A DNA stretch of 64,000 nucleotides from Zygnema circumcarinatum SAG 698-1b (Eukaryota; Plantae; Zygnematophyceae). The notes beneath the pieces are model-generated. The model made no database searches. It saw nothing but the letters and a program-made list of their open reading frames with translations, and had not been told where the DNA came from. The number at the start of each line of letters is the position of its first letter. The first letter of the stretch is position 1. The translations under genes and the position numbers were made by a program. Positions 2,833 through 11,258 of the stretch are shown piece by piece. The stretch lies in assembly GCA_037447605.1 (NCBI GenBank), contig CM074817.1, positions 1,550,001-1,614,000 of the forward strand, written 5' to 3'.

Positions 2833-5800
2833 ATGGCGACGAGAGTGGCGAAGCTCTGCGCTGCCGCGCTGCGCCGGCAGCGGCCTCGCCCACAGGGGTC
2901 GAACGCTTCTTGCAGCTCCGGCTTCTTCTCTCTAATGCATAGAGAAATTTCAGATCCCTCTCGCTTGCCCTCTCCTCTCGCTCCCAAACTTTCTCCGATC
3001 CCTTCCTCTCAAGCCCTGCCACGTGTCAATCCTTCTCTCCACACCACCTCTGGTTTAGCTGCTTCACTTTGCCACGTCTCAGGACCTCGCAGGTCCAAGG
3101 GCTCTGTCGCAACAGAGGGTGCGAAGGGAAGCCACGAATCTGAAGCTTCTGATGGTAAAGGGGAGGCAATGGCGGGAAGTAAGGAGGCAGAGGAGCTTCC
3201 TGCAAAGGTTCTTGAAGAGTTGGCGAAGTCAACTGAGGAGTCTTTCGGCGAACATCAGTTCACTGCAAGCACACATTTGAATCTCGCGCATGCTTACTTC
3301 AGGGAGGGAGATGGTGGTGCTAAGGTTTTCGCAGCAGCTCAGAAAGCTTGGAAGGTACATATAACGTTGCAGATAGAGACTTTTTTCCTACGTATGTTTT
3401 GTTTATATTATCGTTTCTCAACTTCTTCCCATGGAAATGCTATCAGGGCACTCGGCGTTATATATTGATCGAGGTTAAAGTACTGAGGATGCAGTCGGTA
3501 TTTTCCATTTAGATCAAACTTCTTCTTTTTTGGTCTAGCAATTCACTTAAGCTAGCTGAATTTCTTTACTAAAACATGGTCAAGAATTCTATTTTTTTGT
3601 TGAGCGTAAGGTTTCGAAGTCAATTTGATGATTCAGAATTTCATGACAGCTGTTTTAATCACTGATTCCTTCAAGTATTTCCTGTTAATCTTGAAGTCAG
3701 CCAGGCCAGAGGTAGCATTACTGGGAGCGAATCGTTGAAATTGAAAAACATTCAGATTTGGTACCTCTCCTCAACTCTCTTCTTTCTCTCTCTCTTTCTC
3801 TCTTTCTCTCTAACCTTTTCCTCTCGTCCTTAGAGAAAGAACTTGCCCATTGTGAATCTATTCCCACCCTGGCCGAAAGCGCTTGTAGAGACCCCATTTC
3901 ACTCCTTTTTTTCGTTATACGTTATGGAAATTCGAAGTACTAACTAACAGCTCCATAATCTGGGCTAGGCAGTGACTGACCCTTCCATGTGTTGTGAGAG
4001 TGAGAACGACCGAAACTCTCTGGCGTTTCACAGATACCACATCCCTTTAGTTGTCCAAGCAGAACACATTCCGCTATGCTTATCAGAGTAGTCGTTGTAG
4101 TCAAAGACGGCTGCTAACATCCAGGTGAGAAGCCCCCGTCGCGGACGACGGGAGCTTCGCACCTCCTGTGTTGAATAGTCACTGAGAAAGTGTTTCACCA
4201 AAATTGGTTACTTACTATAATTTATGTTCGGTCTGCACTAAACTCGAATCTTTCTGAACACAATCCTCTATGCGAGCTGATGTAACCATAGTGGTGCCAC
4301 CATGAGATGCAGAGAAACTCACTTGATGATGAGGATTGAGGATGGGGAGATGATGATGGATGGGGTTGAGCATGGGGAGACAGTGGTTCGACGTTCACTC
4401 AAACTCAGATAGTCTGGAACGTATCATGTGCCTTCATATAATGGCTGCTGCAAAGATCAGGTACCACCATCTTTTGTTTTTCATTTTTCCATCGAAGCAC
4501 ACATATAGGGGTTCAAATTTTGCTCGGGAGTTGAGATTGATGGTTTCAAACTCGGAGTCACAACACCTGCACTCACTTCAAACCAGCCTCGAACTTGAGA
4601 CGCATTCTCATATCAAGATTATGGAGGCTATGCATGCAGGATGGGCCAATTCCCTGAAGCTCTGCCCCTGCTGGAGATGGCAAGCGGCCTCGCAGATGAA
4701 ACGAAAGGCGAAAAGTATGCCATGATGCTATTCGCGTCACATATGCTGACAGGGGACGCGTGGCAACTGTTGGGAGCACAACTTGATGCTCGGGAAGCTT
4801 TCGTGTAAGTGCAGATTTAAGAAGAAGGATCTGTTCTTTTCTCTTTGAAGGGGCGTAAACTCGCTGCAGGCTTTGTTGGTAAATTTAGAAACGTCAGTCC
4901 GTTGAAGTTTTGTGGTTTACCCTAGGCTTATTGATGTCTTAGACGTGTGAGGGCTTCAACCTCAACAAAAGTAGAGAAGTAAAGAGGACACGAACTGCCC
5001 CATTCAGCAATCTGGAATGGATTTGGTTGCGAGAAAGAATGCTGGCGATAGCTTGAAACACATCTTTGTTTCAAGGCAATGATGACATGTTGCCAGACGA
5101 GTAGGGTTTCAAGGTTGTTGTATTGTACCCGTTTTGGTCAGGAAGGCTCTCGCTGTCCAAGAGCGGCAGCTCGCCGCAGATGACCCGCGAATAGCGAACA
5201 CGTGTCGCCGTTTAGCAGATGCACATGCGCAGCTGATGGAGTTTGAGCAGGCGGAGCCGTTGGCAGTTCGGGCTCTCAACATTCACATGCAGATGGGGGA
5301 AGTGTCAATAGAGGAGGCTGTTGATAGGAGGTGAGCTTCATTCCTTTACCGTGCGTATTGTTGGAGCTTCAGAAATACATATGGTTTATTTGAAGAGACA
5401 TGCTCACAGTTGCATCTTTGCAGTATACTTCTATATTATGAATTTTAGAAGAACGATGCCCTCACTTCATCCACTCCTACATGTTATGTATCCCATTGAC
5501 ATGATAAGCCATCTTTTTCCACTAGTAATTTGTGCTACCTTGCCAGACTCCTTGCTGCCATCTATGCAGGTCTGGATGAACCCGAGCGAGCCTTGATGCA
5601 CTTAGAAGCTGCGAAGGGTGTTTTAGCAGAGAGAGGAGGGAGGCTGGATACTGCTCTCACAGAGGCAGCTATAGGAGACATGCTGGTCACCATGGAGAAA
5701 CCGGAGGAAGCCATGGCTGCTTTTGAGACAGCATTGCATGTCATGGTGGAGCTGCTGGGAGAGGAGCATCCCTCCGTGGCAGCTGTCTACGCATCTTCTG

Positions 5801-6832
5801 CAGATGCAAGTTTGAAGGCTGGCAAAGTCAAGGAGGCAGAGGTGAGAAATGTACATTTTTTTCTTTTGTCTTTGTTGTGATGTATCGATTCCACTTGATG
5901 AAGCACTGTTCCAGAAGCTGAAATCGAAATCGTATTCGAATGTGACAGGAGTTTTGCGAAAAATCCCTTCGCATCTACGAGAAGGGAGAAGGGGATGACC
6001 TCGTTGAGACTGCCAATGGCTTGACTGAGATTTCAGGAATTTATTCATCGCTAGGAAACTTAGGGAGGGCAATAGAGTTGCTCCGTCGGGCTTTGCTGCT
6101 TCGCCTTAGAGTTCCTGGCCAGCTATTTGCAGCTGCAGGTATTTGCCCTTACTATCGAACTTGCATGCACTACTGTGAAATATCCGCAAATGGAATATTT
6201 TCAATAAGAACCGCTGCTTAATGCGTTTGCTGTACTTTACAGGCACGGAGGCAAGCATGGCTGTACTGCTACTCTCAGCCGGCTTTAATAAGTTAGCTCT
6301 TGATGCTTTGCGGAGCTGCAAAGACAAGATGAAGGCGGCATGCGGTGAAGACCATCCCTTGATAGTTAGAGTCCTTTACTATGAGGCCTTGGCCCTGACA
6401 AGTGGTGGACTCGAACTCGGGTCAGAAGAGGAAGCACTTGAGCTTCTGAAGCAGGCAAGGGCGGTGTTGGAAAAGTCGAAACTTCAGGATGTTCCAGAGG
6501 CGGTGGATGTCTATTCGAGCCTCGCAGATCTACACGAGAAAGGCGGCAGGTGCGTATTTGGATCAGTGAAAATGATGTGTTTTTTGTAGACTACGATGTA
6601 TTGCACATTTGCATGTTTGTCCAATTGGTCGTTTTTCTCTTGGTGCAAAAGAAGGTAGTTCGTGTGCCGTGTGATAGGCGTGCAGGGAGGGGGGGGGAGG
6701 GGGGGCAGGTTGAGGGAGGCCGTGGAATGTCTGGGACGAGTTGTGGAGGGTAAAGAAGCGCTTTTGGGACGGCAGCATCCGGAGGTGGCAGCGTGCAAAA
6801 AGAGGCTCGCGGATGTTAGCAGTCGAATGTGA
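2833..6832 (+). CDS. Multi-exon TPR protein, kinesin-light-chain-related (KLCR-like), with an Arg/Ser/Ala-rich organellar presequence
   Basis: Exons encode MGQFPEALPLLE, ALAVQERQLAADDPRIANTCRRLADAHAQLMEFEQAEPL, ELLGEEHPSVAAVY and EALLGRQHPEVAACKKRLAD. These are KLC-type TPR repeats like plant KLCR proteins. Start MATRVAKLCAAALRRQR; stop TGA 6830-6832. Internal exons at 3.4-4.6 kb are not fully resolved. Confidence 0.8.
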
Positions 6833-7064: not shown

Positions 7065-7144
7065 GCATTCGAACTTAAGAAACTTCATAGTATTGAGCGA
7101 TGATTGACGAAGGTTTAAGGCCAGCAGGTATGCGCATAGGCATG
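7065..7144. repeat. Left arm of an 80-bp inverted repeat
   Basis: Reverse complement of 8009-8088 with 1 mismatch (79/80). Confidence 0.95.
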
Positions 7145-7430
7145 CATTGCAGGCCTGGTCCAAGCATTTTCGAAAAAACTTCAAGAATAATCCTAGAGGC
7201 TTGGGGTGGAATAACCCAAACAAGAAAAATAGTCAATCTTGTGCTTCAATATATGCTTCTGAACATAATTATGGCCATACTGGCTTTACGGAGACAACGG
7301 TTTAGGTAGATCCTTAGTACGACTTGGTCTACTCCTACATGCCCAGACGCCAATGATAATAGACTTGATAAAAAATGTACGCAACAGGATCCAAAATGGA
7401 GTGATCCAAAATCGCATTAAAAAATGGCCA
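7145..7430 (+). pseudogene. Decayed 3' end of a bacterial serine hydrolase/beta-lactamase-fold gene (Bacteroidota GH3-beta-lactamase fusion type)
   Basis: Reads RGLGWNNP...YGHTGFTETTV*VDP*YDLVY...PDANDNRL..IKNVRNRIQ, matching the recalled pattern RGLGWD...FGHTGFTGTxxWxDPxxxL...YPxxxNNxLxxxNxRxxIQ. In-frame TAG at 7303-7305 and 7315-7317, plus frameshifts. Confidence 0.7.
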
Positions 7431-7463
7431 ATGAACTTATGCACAATTCAATAACTACTCACT

Positions 7464-8010
7464 TTGTCGTTCACTAAACAGCAGCAGGCTTTGAATTTCA
7501 AAAAGACCCTTTCTAGTTGGCTAACTAATCGTTACCAACTCGTTATTCGCAATGAAGGAAATTTGGAGTTGAAATCAAGTTTCAGTTTCAGTTACGCTAA
7601 GCTCATTTCCTTAGGCGCTATGCTATTTATCATTTTAGTAGCGTGCAGTCTGACATTGGCTACAACTATCATGGCTAGGTGGCTAAATCCTACTTACATA
7701 GAGCAAGAAAATAAAAAATAAAATTATGCAACTTTCTTTTGCAGTAGATACACTCGAGGAACAAACCATCCAACAGAAATTTTTTATTACGCTCCTGCAG
7801 AACATTATTGCAGGCAATAATACACCTAGTAATGAGCTTCTCACAACTAATGACGAGCAAGCTGAGAAAATTCCTGCGCCTTTCTCATCAGAGCAACTTG
7901 CTAGCGCTGATGCGCTGCTTCGGGGTGAATTTGAGACTGACAAATTATCTCCTCTGTTGGCTAGCTATAACAAGCCTGTTAATGACTTGCAAGAGCTCTT
8001 TTTCTTTCCA
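7464..8010 (+). pseudogene. 5' half of a bacterial (Cytophagales-like) M23 family metallopeptidase gene, frameshifted and truncated
   Basis: KKTLSSWLTNRYQLVIRNEGNLELKSSFSFSYAKLI-TM-RWLNPTYIEQENKK, then stop/+1 shift at 7719-7722, then IMQLSFAVDTLEEQTIQQKFFITLLQNIIAG...LQELFFFP. This is the N-terminal TM/coiled-coil typical of Cytophagales M23 proteins. Intronless, AT-rich, and cut off before the catalytic domain. Confidence 0.75.
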
Positions 8011-8088
8011 TGCCTATGCGCATACCTGCTGGCCTTAAACCTTCGTCAATCATCGCTCAATACTATGGAGTTTCTTAAGTTCGAATGC
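8009..8088. repeat. Right arm of the 80-bp inverted repeat
   Basis: Reverse complement of 7065-7144 with 1 mismatch. Confidence 0.95.
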
Positions 8089-9218
8089 GAACATGCCGAG
8101 TGCCACCCCGACCCATGCATGCATGCCAATTTCCCATCGCTAGGTTCGCGGCATCCCATGCCAACAGCCCATGTTCACGTTCTATGTTGAACTCAAACAG
8201 TTCCCGTTTGCTTGACCGTTAGATCTATGATAAATCTATTTGCCGTTTGCGCATAGAACCGTCGCCATAAATGCCGACACGTGCGGCGTGCGCGGAGCGC
8301 CTACCGCGGCGCTGATTGGGCCGTGGCCACAGAGCCTGTGTAAACAGTGCCAGCTCGGACTCGCCTGCCAACGTGGCACATCTCCACGTGGCAGCTTCTC
8401 GATCACAAGCTTCACCGGGCGGTGCGGAGCGGTCGACCTCTCTCGGTCGACCTCTCTATAGGTCGGTGCCGTACGATGCCAGGCATAGCGCGGGCGGGGG
8501 CGGCCGTGCAGCCCTCTGATTGGTCCGTTATCGTGACGGCGGCGGCCGCTATTGGGCGACGACAAGCGTTTTATTTGTCGTTATGTGCTGTTTCTTTCGG
8601 CTGCAGAATCTCTAGGAGAAAGCCCTGTACGGCCGCCGGCCCCTACTGGGCCACGTCATGATCGTGGCCGGATTTTTTTCACGGGCAGTCTGGGCATGGC
8701 AATAAAAAAAATCTTTTTTCGGCTCTGGGCTTTTTGTGCAACTGTTCCACCGCCGGTTTCCAAGAAATAGTTTTTTTCTGGCTGACCGGCACGGGTGCGT
8801 TGAGTTTTTTTCGCAGGCTTTATTCAAACGTTTTTTGTCATTTTTCTGTACGGCTGCCAGCAGAAACAAAAAAATTACAGCCCGTTGGCGGCAGATTTCG
8901 TCATTTAGCCAAACGACATGCAGGCAATCGTGCGCCGCCCTGTCCCATCCGAACGGCTCCTCCCGCCTAACCCTCATTGTGAGAATCCATACTTTCCACG
9001 TGGCACCGTACAACGTCCTCTCTCCGTACTGCGTACGTGTCGCTCAGGGATTCGTGGAGGTCGTCGCAAGGCACCAATGTGGTCGCGCCACGTGGTGCAG
9101 GGCACGAGGGCGGCCTGCAGGGGAGGGGGGGGGGTAAGGGGGGGGAGTTGCAGAAGAGCTCTTCTGCTTTGCGCTGCAGGCCGGCTGTGAGGGCAAATTA
9201 GGGTTTGCTCTGCAGGGG

Positions 9219-11258
9219 ATGGGGCTATGGGGGCGCATTCTGGAGGACGTGCCGTGGGCAGACATAGAGGAGACTTTCTCCTTCGGTCCGGAGATAGGGA
9301 GCGGCTCCCTTGGCGTTGTCAGGCTCTGCTATGAGAGGAGTTCAGGGGAAGTGTTCGCTTGCAAGAGCATTCAAAAATGCATACTGAGGGAGGATGAAAA
9401 CAGAGAGGACGTGCGGAGAGAGGTGCAGATAATGCGGCTGCTCTCGAGGGAGGCACACCCGCAGGTGGTGCAGCTGAAAACGGTGTTTGAAGACTCTGCA
9501 AGCCTACATTTGGTGATGGAGTATTGCCGCGGAGGTGAGCTATTTGCGGTTCTCGCAGAGAGAGGGAGCTTCACGGAGCCGGAGGCGGCGGACATATTCA
9601 GGCAGATAGTGAAGGGAGTGCAGTTCTGCCATTCTCAAGGGATTTTGCATCGTGATTTGAAGCCGGAAAACGTGCTGGTGACGGAATATATTTCTGGAGA
9701 GCTCGAGGATTTGAGTAGCCATGGCGCCTTCTTGCGAAATTTCAGCACGGGAAGCGCCAGTAGCTCAGGCACCTCAATCGCTGATTCAGAAGGCAGTCAC
9801 CGCGAAGCACGGAGCGTTTTATCGGAGCCTAACTCGTGGGAGAGGCTTGATAGTGACAACTGGCAGGGAGGGGGTCTTAGAGGGGAGGGTAGCATGGGAT
9901 GGGAGGTGAGAGGAGAGGTAGCGGGAGCAGCAGAGTTGGAAGAGGTGGGAGACCTTTCAACCTTGAATGTGGAAAACTGGGAGAGGGAGAGTGGCGGTGA
10001 AACTGATGAAGATATTAGCAATGCAAGCAAAAGCTGCCGAGACGAAATTAAGATACGAGTTAAGCTCGGAGATTTCGGCCTTGCGGTGTTCATGGATTTG
10101 GATGGAAAGTATCGCTCTTTAAGCAGCAAGGCCAGCGAGCTTCAGTGCCCTACTCCCCTTTACAGTGCCCCAGAGCTCGCGCTTGCTAGGGCGTATGGCA
10201 GGGAGGCGGATATGTGGAGTCTGGGAGTGATTCTCTACGCCCTTATTGGAGGGGAGCTGCCATTCAGAGGCTCAACGCAGAAGGAGTTGGACCGCTGCAT
10301 TCGAAGGAGGAGACTTAAGTTTTCAAGTGGTCCGTGGCTTTCAGTCTCTGACTCTGTAAAATCCTTAATCCGGAGGTTGCTTGATACAAACCCGCAGCGG
10401 CGGCCGCTTACTGCAGAAGTTCTCATACATCCATGGCTGCAGCAGGGGCAGCATTGGCATTCACGTAGCGACCGGAAACTCCTCGAGCGATCTAAATCTC
10501 TTGGAGCGAAAGTGCTGCCGAGACGAACAAACTTGGAGAGACTCTTTGCGTGGACTCCCGGGTCTTCTTCTACACCTAACAGCTGTGCAGGAACTCCAAA
10601 CCCTACGACGGCAAGGGCACAGGGGAACAATGCACCGCTGTTCTCACTTTTTTTGAAAACCTCAGGGAAGGAGACGAGAGCTATCTCTTCCGGTGAATTC
10701 TCTGCATCTCCAGTGATCGTTCCCGTTGTGTCCTCCAACTCAACTTCCCCCTCGCATACTCCTTCACCACAGTCTCCTCTCTCCCCCTTGTCTGCCCATT
10801 TTTCAGCGAGGGAGGCCCATCCACTACTGTTAGACCCTAGATGTAACCTTTCGGAGTACGAAGAATGCAAGAAATGCCCTGGTGGAGGGCCTAATTTTGG
10901 AACTACTAGCGTCTTAGTTAGCTCAGGCAAATGTCCATGTGCAGTGAGGACGGAGATTGCTCCCATTTGTGGAATGGTTGTTGAAGAGGGTGTGAGAGAG
11001 TTGAAATCGACGTGGACAGTGGAGGCAGCCACTCTGCTTTTCTGCGAGCCAAGTTTGACTTCGTGTGAGAGAGAAACGGAAAGTGGAGGAGTGTTTCTTG
11101 GCAAAAAGACCCTCAAGACTCTAAAGACCTTTAAATCATTTAAGTCTTTGAAGCCGGATCAAGTAGTCATGCAGGGATGGGTGCAGCAGGCTCGCCTTCT
11201 GAAGGAACGCCTGAGGTCATATTCTCTTCGCTCACTACCAACCGTTGAGGGAGGTTAA
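9219..11258 (+). CDS. Intronless CDPK/PEPRK-related Ser/Thr kinase (679 aa), no EF-hands, large insert between subdomains VIb and VII
   Basis: GSGSLG, FACKSI, REVQIM, LVMEYCRGGELF, HRDLKPEN, KLGDFG, YSAPE, DMWSLGVILY and GPWLSVSDSVKSLIRRLL in one uninterrupted ORF. Confidence 0.9.
   Translation: MGLWGRILEDVPWADIEETFSFGPEIGSGSLGVVRLCYERSSGEVFACKSIQKCILREDENREDVRREVQIMRLLSREAHPQVVQLKTVFEDSASLHLVMEYCRGGELFAVLAERGSFTEPEAADIFRQIVKGVQFCHSQGILHRDLKPENVLVTEYISGELEDLSSHGAFLRNFSTGSASSSGTSIADSEGSHREARSVLSEPNSWERLDSDNWQGGGLRGEGSMGWEVRGEVAGAAELEEVGDLSTLNVENWERESGGETDEDISNASKSCRDEIKIRVKLGDFGLAVFMDLDGKYRSLSSKASELQCPTPLYSAPELALARAYGREADMWSLGVILYALIGGELPFRGSTQKELDRCIRRRRLKFSSGPWLSVSDSVKSLIRRLLDTNPQRRPLTAEVLIHPWLQQGQHWHSRSDRKLLERSKSLGAKVLPRRTNLERLFAWTPGSSSTPNSCAGTPNPTTARAQGNNAPLFSLFLKTSGKETRAISSGEFSASPVIVPVVSSNSTSPSHTPSPQSPLSPLSAHFSAREAHPLLLDPRCNLSEYEECKKCPGGGPNFGTTSVLVSSGKCPCAVRTEIAPICGMVVEEGVRELKSTWTVEAATLLFCEPSLTSCERETESGGVFLGKKTLKTLKTFKSFKSLKPDQVVMQGWVQQARLLKERLRSYSLRSLPTVEGG

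What the first reader, a model, noticed from the sequence alone, without database searches (positions are those of the whole stretch)
7145..8008. 864-bp decayed two-gene Bacteroidota (Cytophagales/endosymbiont-like) fragment in plant nuclear DNA
Seen in sequence: 230 bp after the TPR gene stop comes an AT-rich, intronless block (sampled lines ~25-40% GC). It holds the 3' end of a serine hydrolase gene followed, operon-style, by the 5' half of an M23 peptidase gene. Both carry lesions: stops at 7303, 7315 and 7719, plus frameshifts. From recall, these N-terminal and C-terminal motifs are typical of Cytophagales, and the tight gene spacing suggests a reduced genome such as an Amoebophilaceae/Cardinium-like symbiont. 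Inference: the decay argues for a genuine, aged bacterium-to-plant DNA transfer, possibly a trace of an undescribed intracellular symbiont, rather than contamination from a live gene.
Basis: partly seen in the sequence, partly recalled or inferred. Interest (0 to 1): 0.75.

Follow-up and report, generated by a model that had tools for sequence, protein, structure and literature searches.

The report
Dead symbiont-like bacterial DNA in algal chromosome
An 864-letter dead piece of two neighbouring genes from a bacterium of the Amoebophilaceae, a family of cell-dwelling symbionts, sits between two ordinary genes of a green alga; it is bracketed by an 80-letter inverted copy of the alga's own DNA, and adds to other signs that such a bacterium lived in or with this alga.

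Summary
Window 7145-8008 lines up, in the same gene order and at about 75% DNA identity, with two Amoebophilaceae genome bins (L008, L009). It holds the last ~210 bases of a large GH3 + beta-lactamase-like hydrolase gene, a spacer, and the first two thirds of a ~290-aa M23 peptidase gene, ending just before the catalytic domain. The stops at 7303, 7315 and 7719 and several frameshifts are real.

A tree places the fragment inside the Amoebophilaceae clade. The hydrolase-M23 adjacency occurs only in that clade among 167 fetched loci.

This note missed that the block is bracketed exactly by an 80-nt inverted repeat of non-bacterial DNA (7065-7144 / 8009-8088, 79/80), with no target-site duplication. 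I read this as foreign DNA captured at a repaired chromosome break with a templated inverted duplication, not a transposon.

The inference "decay proves an old transfer" is weak. The same two genes are decaying in living relatives, and the near-identical arms suggest that much of the decay predates insertion.

I could not verify the junctions with reads or a second assembly.

The scan has already noted at least six other dead Bacteroidota-like scraps elsewhere in this genome. This one is the longest noted and the only two-gene one, so it resolves the donor by gene order as well as sequence.

The parts
6662..6832 (+). last TPR-matching exon/ORF of the upstream host gene (stop at 6830-6832)
   Evidence: ORF list; Pfam TPR_10/TPR_12 on this and three upstream exons
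7065..7144 (.). left arm of the 80-nt inverted repeat; non-bacterial, host-like DNA
   Evidence: the repeat finder I1, 99% complementary. blastn shows it is unique in the window apart from its partner. No match to any bacterial locus.
7145..8008 (+). bacterial (Amoebophilaceae-like) block: the whole insert between the arms
   Evidence: GC 0.39. Collinear blastn matches to L008 and L009. Alignment A2.
7157..7367 (+). 3' remnant of a GH3 + beta-lactamase-like serine hydrolase gene. Lesions: 2-nt deletion after 7177, TAG at 7303-7305, TAG at 7315-7317, 14-nt deletion after 7332, and a 72-nt deletion after 7367 that removes the end of the gene.
7368..7490 (+). intergenic spacer of the donor, with a 7-nt insertion (7396-7402) and a 1-nt deletion after 7462 relative to L008
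7491..8008 (+). 5' two thirds of an M23 peptidase gene: N-terminal membrane anchor and linker, ending ~15-20 codons before the M23 domain. A 1-nt insertion at 7719 gives TAA (7719-7721) and a frameshift. There is an in-frame 3-nt insertion at 7954-7956.
8009..8088 (.). right arm of the inverted repeat; single mismatch at 8068 (G) opposite 7085 (T)
9219..11258 (+). downstream host Ser/Thr kinase ORF (679 aa)
   Evidence: Pfam Pkinase E 3.5e-66; best database relatives are plant CDPK-type kinases at 40-57% identity

Best explanation
This is a non-functional fossil of bacterial DNA built into the alga's nuclear chromosome.

Origin. A roughly 0.86-kb piece of the genome of an Amoebophilaceae-type bacterium (Bacteroidota, Cytophagales; a family of intracellular symbionts) was captured when a chromosome break was repaired. 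The break lay in the spacer between a TPR gene and a kinase gene. The piece spans the end of a hydrolase gene and the start of the neighbouring M23 peptidase gene.

Repair signature (inferred). The same repair event copied 80 nt of adjacent host DNA in inverted orientation on the far side of the insert. This is a templated, template-switch type of end joining, as seen with filler DNA at break-repair and T-DNA junctions. It produced the exact inverted-repeat bracket without a target-site duplication.

Timing (inferred). Much of the gene decay probably happened in the donor. Relatives of the donor are losing these same genes, and the arms are still 79/80 identical. The transfer would then be comparatively recent rather than ancient.

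Function. The fragment encodes nothing usable.

Shown: bacterial origin, donor clade, gene order, lesions and the bracket.
Inferred: the repair mechanism, the timing, and that the donor lived inside the alga.
For: Origin:
- phmmer best hit E 6e-26.
- Full-length relatives carry Peptidase_M23.
- Best genome hits are Amoebophilaceae bins at 72-75% identity, against ~50% for other Cytophagales.
- DNA is collinear with L008 and L009 at 75%.
- The ML tree puts the window inside the Amoebophilaceae clade (98/93*, 96/84*).
- Among 167 loci, hydrolase-M23 adjacency is intact only in L008, L009, L088 and L089, with remnants in L001 and L011.

Integration:
- The block lies in one gap-free stretch (no N) between intron-bearing TPR exons and a eukaryotic kinase ORF.
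- It is bracketed base-for-base by an 80-nt inverted repeat of non-bacterial DNA.
- The arms differ at one position, so they are not a simple k-mer overlap copy.
- Under the model 'ancestral 7144 joined to 8089', the insert's last bases TTCC are complementary to GGAA across that join. This is a 4-nt microhomology that could have primed the inverted copy (read; suggestive only).

Not a transposon: the 2-, 3-, 8- and 9-nt flanks do not match, and there is no other copy of the arms in 64 kb.

Timing: two substitution-born stops imply roughly 6% unconstrained divergence, while 79/80 arms have P<=0.003 if each arm had diverged 5%. Living relatives carry independent lesions in both genes.

Pattern: scan notes report six or more other dead Bacteroidota-like scraps in this genome, one of them assigned to Amoebophilaceae. 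I did not re-test these.
Against: - No independent check of either junction was possible. There were no reads. No second assembly or related species was found.
- No empty site is available, so which arm is the original, and the whole repair scenario, remain inference.
- Gene conversion between the arms could keep them alike and hide an old insertion.
- The timing arithmetic rests on two stops and one mismatch. A post-insertion divergence near 2% is only mildly disfavoured.
- The nearest known relatives are only ~75% identical, so the true donor is unsampled and its state (alive, intracellular, already decayed) is unknown.
- The codon-position and CpG tests did not discriminate.
Confidence: 0.68

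Rival explanations
1. Ancient transfer with in-place decay. A live two-gene piece entered the nucleus long ago, and all stops and frameshifts arose afterwards in the alga.
For: Seven or more lesions are specific to the window copy and are not shared with L008, L009 or L088. Window-specific changes are biased GC>AT, 54 against 25. The block's GC is lower than that of its relatives.
Against: The arms are 79/80. With the ~6% unconstrained divergence implied by two stops, 10 or more mismatches are expected (P about 0.001), unless gene conversion acted. Relatives show that both genes decay inside the bacteria. The sister lineage L006 has similarly low GC (0.41), so low GC may come from the donor.
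Confidence: 0.2
2. Assembly or library chimera. DNA of a co-cultured or intracellular Amoebophilaceae bacterium, possibly a pseudogene region, was wrongly joined into an algal contig.
For: Algal cultures are rarely bacteria-free. Decay does not exclude a bacterial source, since relatives carry such pseudogenes. No read-level check was possible.
Against: The piece is only 864 nt and has algal DNA on both sides in a gap-free sequence. The structure needs three precise switches that end exactly back at the neighbouring host base. That is natural for break repair but odd for a chimeric read, and it would also have to win the consensus. The arms differ at one base. Several similar scraps sit inside spliced introns elsewhere in the genome according to scan notes (untested here).
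Confidence: 0.1
3. Cargo of a Pack-type DNA transposon with terminal inverted repeats. The 80-nt arms are the ends of an algal transposon that picked up bacterial DNA and moved here.
For: A perfect-length 80-nt terminal inverted repeat brackets a foreign cargo exactly. This was suggested by sister note s1-390440.
Against: There is no target-site duplication of 2, 3, 8 or 9 nt, although the arms are 99% alike and a duplication should therefore still be intact. No second copy of the arms lies in 64 kb. No transposon-internal sequence lies between the arms and the cargo. The ends carry no motif of a known superfamily (from my own knowledge).
Confidence: 0.06

Closest known systems
Nuclear integrants of endosymbiont DNA: Wolbachia 'nuwts' in arthropods and nematodes, and the ~9-kb rickettsial four-gene block in the nuclear genome of Volvox carteri strain EVE (PMC4324946)
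   Same: A stretch of an intracellular-type bacterium's genome, keeping the donor's gene order, lies in host nuclear DNA. It is non-functional and serves as a trace of a past or present association.
   Different: The donor here is Bacteroidota (Amoebophilaceae), not Rickettsiales. The host is a streptophyte alga. The piece is small (0.86 kb). No symbiont has been seen in this host. I found no paper linking Amoebophilaceae to streptophyte or zygnematophyte algae in the searchable library.
NUMT/NUPT and T-DNA insertion junctions with filler DNA (end joining with templated insertions; from my own knowledge)
   Same: Extrachromosomal DNA is captured at a double-strand break. There is no target-site duplication. 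A short copy of flanking host DNA, sometimes inverted, sits at the junction, with possible microhomology.
   Different: An 80-nt inverted copy placed on the far side of the insert is long for such filler. The mechanism is inferred here, not shown.
Pack-MULE / Pack-type TIR transposons carrying captured gene fragments
   Same: Terminal inverted repeats bracket a captured, non-functional gene fragment.
   Different: There is no target-site duplication, no other copies in the window, no transposon-internal sequence, and the cargo is bacterial rather than host.
Amoebophilaceae genome bins L008 (JANPMB010000033.1, VAR_48_metabat_363) and L009 (DCSL01000020.1, UBA1467)
   Same: The same two genes lie in the same order and orientation, at ~75% DNA identity across nearly the whole block.
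   Different: L008 has both genes intact. The window copy is truncated at both ends and carries its own stops and frameshifts. At 25% divergence the actual donor is an unsampled lineage. In the tree its sister is metagenome contig L006.

Membership tests
Peptidase M23 (Pfam PF01551) gene | M23 catalytic domain with the HxxxD and HxH zinc ligands | tested here: not met
   The block ends ~15-20 codons before the domain, and Pfam finds no M23 domain in the pieces. It is a fragment of the N-terminal part of such a gene, not a peptidase.
Peptidase M23 (Pfam PF01551) gene | Homology of the N-terminal anchor/linker to proteins that carry the M23 domain | tested here: met
   phmmer E 6e-26 to 1e-12. 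Full-length hits P0004, P0011, P0018 and others have PF01551 at E 1e-27. The ESM Atlas names the nearest clusters 'Lipoprotein NlpD family'.
Beta-lactamase-like serine hydrolase (class C / PBP4B type) | C-terminal K/H-T/S-G box region | tested here: met
   GHTGFT at 7279-7296 aligns with GHSGFTGT of the L008 hydrolase. NCBIfam PBP4B E 1.5e-4. blastn 75% over 180 nt.
Beta-lactamase-like serine hydrolase (class C / PBP4B type) | Catalytic SxxK motif and an intact reading frame | tested here: not met
   Only the last ~70 codons are present, with two stops and frameshifting deletions of 2 and 14 nt.
Amoebophilaceae-derived DNA | Nearest sequences and clade membership | tested here: met
   The top three named genome hits are Amoebophilaceae or closely allied bins. 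The clade is starred 98/93 and 96/84.
Amoebophilaceae-derived DNA | Donor-specific gene order (hydrolase immediately upstream of M23) | tested here: met
   Found only in L008, L009, L088 and L089, with remnants in L001 and L011, among 167 loci.
Nuclear integrant of bacterial/symbiont DNA | Contiguous with host nuclear genes on both sides | tested here: met
   TPR exons lie upstream and a kinase ORF downstream in one N-free sequence. This holds as assembled only.
Nuclear integrant of bacterial/symbiont DNA | Junctions confirmed by independent reads, PCR or a second assembly | not testable with these tools
   Exact look-ups of four window ORFs found nothing. The nearest protein to the kinase is 40% identical.
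Nuclear integrant of bacterial/symbiont DNA | Donor is or was an intracellular resident of this host | not testable with these tools
   This rests only on the lifestyle of named Amoebophilaceae (my own knowledge) and on the genome decay seen in relatives.
TIR DNA transposon with cargo (Pack-type) | Terminal inverted repeats | tested here: met
   80 nt, 79/80.
TIR DNA transposon with cargo (Pack-type) | Target-site duplication flanking the TIRs | tested here: not met
   The left flank ...gcacgaatt and the right flank gaacatgcc... do not match at 2, 3, 8 or 9 nt.
TIR DNA transposon with cargo (Pack-type) | Other copies of the same ends in the genome | tested here: inconclusive
   None in the 64-kb window. 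The rest of the genome was not searchable. The look-up in the scan's notes was blank.

The most novel reading that the evidence does not exclude
This streptophyte alga carries, or recently carried, an undescribed intracellular bacterium of the Amoebophilaceae whose genome was itself decaying. The algal nucleus has repeatedly captured pieces of it at repaired breaks. The many Bacteroidota-like scraps in this genome would then be a scattered archive of one symbiont. That would be the first Bacteroidota endosymbiosis traced in the algal lineage closest to land plants.
Probability: 0.35. Interest if true: 0.8.

Novelty: new member of a known kind. Interest (0 to 1): 0.55.

Why it matters
Dead symbiont DNA in a host nucleus is a durable record of an association that microscopy or culturing may miss. 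No Amoebophilaceae association with streptophyte or zygnematophyte algae turned up in the searchable literature.

This is the longest of the scraps noted in this genome and the only one spanning two genes. It pins the donor to a sub-clade by gene order as well as by sequence.

It also gives concrete targets for testing:
- junction PCR primers;
- a probe target for looking for the bacterium in cultures;
- a junction signature (inverted duplication, no target-site duplication) to look for at the other inserts.

It also carries a caution. Stops and frameshifts in a bacterial insert do not date the transfer when the donor lineage is itself shedding those genes.

Tried and rejected
- Pfam on the three translated pieces gave nothing useful. 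A join with X at the break was used only inside the tree script.
- Exact-protein look-ups of four window ORFs all came back blank. One ORF spanned the right junction, one lay inside the block, one was a TPR exon and one was the kinase. The aim was to find an independent assembly.
- One large word-index protein search with the kinase ORF aimed to find an orthologous locus or empty site. The best hit was 40% identical, so no close relative of the host is in the collection. With hindsight this search was not worth its cost.
- Scans of genome contigs and metagenome contigs for a closer donor found nothing above 75% aa identity.
- Codon-position spectrum of window-specific changes was 13:10:13. L008 and L011 are just as flat in this weakly constrained region, so the test does not discriminate.
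- CpG depletion: the block's o/e of 0.64 equals that of both its bacterial relatives and the host, so it is uninformative.
- A search for further Amoebophilaceae or Cytophagales fragments in the window found none. It used blastn and tblastx against 167 bacterial loci, which cover only genes near the M23 locus.
- The sigma-70 promoter and terminator scan found nothing above chance.
- Transposon reading: rejected for lack of a target-site duplication and of other copies.
- A look-up of the arm sequence in the scan's notes was blank, which is not informative.

Full report
**What is there**

Window 7145-8008 is an 864-nt block of GC 0.39 lying in DNA of GC 0.48-0.56. Upstream are four ORF pieces that match TPR_12/TPR_10 repeats. 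They are separated by intron-like stretches, and the last ends at 6832. Downstream, at 9219-11258, is a 679-aa Ser/Thr kinase ORF. Its nearest database relatives are plant CDPK-type kinases at only 40-57% identity. The scan's earlier notes call the genome a streptophyte green alga; I did not identify the species. The window has no N.

**The bacterial genes**

The three readable pieces were searched separately.

- Piece 7147-7302 ends ...YGHTGFTETTV. It hits the NCBIfam PBP4B model, a beta-lactamase-like serine hydrolase, at profile positions 334-377 of 432 with E 1.5e-4.
- Piece 7464-7718 was run with phmmer against 1.84 billion representatives. It gave 82 hits, the best at E 6e-26 and 68% identity, all starting at the relatives' N-terminus.
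- Full-length relatives are about 290 aa and carry Pfam Peptidase_M23 at the C-terminus.
- Piece 7726-8007 continues the same protein in another frame. It ends at ...LQELFFF, which aligns with ...LQDLYLF / ...LQETYFF about 15-20 residues before the M23 domain.
- The ESM Atlas independently names the nearest clusters 'Lipoprotein NlpD family', Bacteroidota.

**The donor**

- A scan of one genome per bacterial species returned Amoebophilaceae bins first: L008 at 72%, L009 (UBA1467) at 75%, L010 at 71% and L011 at 51%. Free-living Cytophagales followed at about 50-55%.
- The metagenome scan found nothing closer than 75%.
- At DNA level the block is collinear with L008 (7156-7331 with 5584-5761; 7422-8007 with 5931-6513) and with L009, at 74.5-75% identity, E 1e-104 to 1e-107 (alignment A2).
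- In L008 the upstream gene is an intact 1009-aa fusion of a glycoside-hydrolase-3-like N-terminal part (my reading of the sequence; no domain scan was run) and a beta-lactamase-like part. It is followed after about 110 nt by the M23 gene.
- A maximum-likelihood tree of 29 M23 proteins puts the window copy inside the Amoebophilaceae clade (98/93* and 96/84*). Its sister is metagenome contig L006 (95/86*). Its end branch is 0.16, no longer than its neighbours'.
- Among all 167 fetched loci, the hydrolase lies directly upstream of M23 only in L008, L009, L088 and L089. Recognisable remnants lie in the same place in L001 and L011.

Sequence, tree and gene order therefore agree on an Amoebophilaceae-type donor, from a lineage not yet sampled.

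**The lesions**

Relative to the intact genes of L008, the window copy has the following:

| Position | Change |
|---|---|
| after 7177 | 2-nt deletion |
| 7303-7305 | TGG>TAG |
| 7315-7317 | CAG>TAG |
| after 7332 | 14-nt deletion |
| after 7367 | 72-nt deletion, removing the hydrolase's last codons |
| 7396-7402 | 7-nt insertion in the spacer |
| after 7462 | 1-nt deletion in the spacer |
| 7719 | 1-nt insertion, giving TAA plus a frameshift in M23 |
| 7954-7956 | in-frame 3-nt insertion |

Both genes are also cut off by the ends of the block. Nothing functional can be made from it.

**The bracket**

The block is flanked exactly by an inverted repeat of 80 nt, 7065-7144 and 8009-8088, with 79 of 80 positions complementary. 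The one mismatch is T at 7085 opposite G at 8068.

- The arms have no counterpart elsewhere in the 64-kb window.
- They match no bacterial locus. In L008 the homologous region simply continues into the two genes on either side.
- The outer flanks (...gcacgaatt | arm ... arm | gaacatgcc...) show no target-site duplication of 2, 3, 8 or 9 nt, although arms this alike should still have one.
- No transposon-internal sequence lies between the arms and the bacterial DNA. Bacterial homology starts within about 12 nt of 7145 and runs to 8008.

I therefore reject the Pack-type transposon reading raised by sister note s1-390440. It remains open only to a whole-genome search for the arms.

**How it probably arose (inference)**

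The simplest history is a double-strand break between today's 7144 and 8089. It was repaired by end joining that captured a stray piece of bacterial DNA. A template switch then copied 80 nt of the neighbouring host sequence in reverse before rejoining the other end.

Under that model the insert's last four bases, TTCC, are complementary to GGAA across the ancestral 7144|8089 join. That pairing could have primed the inverted copy. A 4-nt match is only suggestive, and I tried more than one model.

A library or assembly chimera would need the same three switches to end exactly at the adjacent host base, and would also have to dominate the consensus. I rate it unlikely but cannot exclude it without reads.

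**Timing**

Two results weaken this.

*The same two genes are decaying in living relatives.*
- The L009/L088 hydrolase has its own 112-nt 3' deletion and a frameshifted end.
- L001 and L011 keep only scraps of the hydrolase.
- L001-L005 have M23 cut at 128 aa.
- L007 has M23 frameshifted, and carries other split genes and an IS transposase.

*The arms look young.*
- About 4.2% of random substitutions in these codons create a stop. Two substitution-born stops therefore imply roughly 6% unconstrained divergence.
- Arms that formed at insertion and had each diverged 5% would show one mismatch or fewer with P about 0.003. At 3% the probability is about 0.05.

Unless gene conversion keeps the arms alike, a good part of the decay predates the insertion. 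The donor region was then probably already a pseudogene, and the transfer comparatively recent. The numbers are small and this is an inference, at about even odds.

Three other observations fit bacterial pseudogene decay, but they also fit decay in the nucleus:
- the GC>AT excess among window-specific changes, 54 against 25;
- the net loss of DNA, about 89 nt deleted against 11 inserted;
- the low GC shared with sister lineage L006.

**Context in this genome**

The scan's notebook lists other dead Bacteroidota-like fragments on other pieces of the same genome:
- an intron mosaic assigned to Amoebophilaceae (s1-406435);
- infB beside telomere-like repeats (s1-346598);
- sufB (s1-378339);
- EF-G (s1-400613);
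- gpmI at about 86% DNA identity to uncultured Bacteroidota (s1-378343);
- lpdA (s1-341360).

I could not re-test these. If they hold, this insert is one of a series, which favours real and repeated integration over a one-off artefact. The kind of finding is therefore not new to this scan. This instance adds the longest piece noted, the only two-gene piece, and the inverted-duplication junction.

**Comparison with what is known**

The closest parallels are Wolbachia-derived nuclear inserts in animals and the ~9-kb rickettsial gene block in the nuclear genome of symbiont-free Volvox carteri (PMC4324946). The differences here are the donor phylum, the host lineage and the small size.

Full-text searches turned up no paper linking Amoebophilaceae to streptophyte or zygnematophyte algae. 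The algal hits concern Ostreobium and coral holobionts.

I file it as a new member of a known kind.

**Verdict**

| Claim | Rating |
|---|---|
| Observation | confirmed |
| Donor assignment | strongly supported |
| Real nuclear integration | about 0.7-0.85, summing the recent and ancient versions |
| 'Ancient, decayed in place' | weakened |
| Transposon | unlikely |
| Artefact | unlikely, but untested at read level |
| Function | none |

Its value is as a marker of a possible undescribed alga-bacterium association.

Noticed in passing
L008:5878-6867 and L009:5992-6873: In the two closest named Amoebophilaceae bins the M23 domain has lost predicted zinc ligands. HLHFE is replaced by HLRFE, and HYGVDIV by NHGVGIV (L008) or QYDVGIV (L009). 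Even the 'intact' relatives probably encode a non-catalytic (NlpD/EnvC-like) or decaying protein.
   Followed up: partly
L007:8900-11900 (ENA ERZ28496113 ctg11228): A relative's contig shows heavy gene decay. A glmS-like gene is split into GATase and SIS pieces of 194, 64, 123, 59 and 170 aa. Bactofilin is cut to 86 aa, an LPG_synthase_TM gene is split in two, and a DDE_Tnp_1 transposase is present. This fits a host-restricted bacterium that is losing genes.
   Followed up: no
L001-L005 (JGI freshwater metagenomes): The same truncated 128-aa M23 remnant, followed by an uncalled ~400-nt gap and bactofilin, recurs on 15 contigs from several samples. This decayed lineage is therefore widespread in those samples.
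   Followed up: no
window 8430-8457: A perfect tandem duplication of a 14-nt unit (CGGTCGACCTCTCT x2) lies in the GC-rich spacer upstream of the kinase gene.
   Followed up: no
window 9219-11258: The 679-aa kinase ORF has its Pkinase domain matched in two stretches, with a long insert between them and a long serine/proline-rich tail. No protein closer than 40% identity exists among 5.8 billion clustered sequences. It looks like a lineage-specific CDPK-related kinase without EF hands.
   Followed up: partly
window 6685-6706: A long G-run (gggaggggggggggagggggggcagg) lies at the start of the last TPR-matching ORF (6662-6832), in or just after the preceding intron-like stretch.
   Followed up: no
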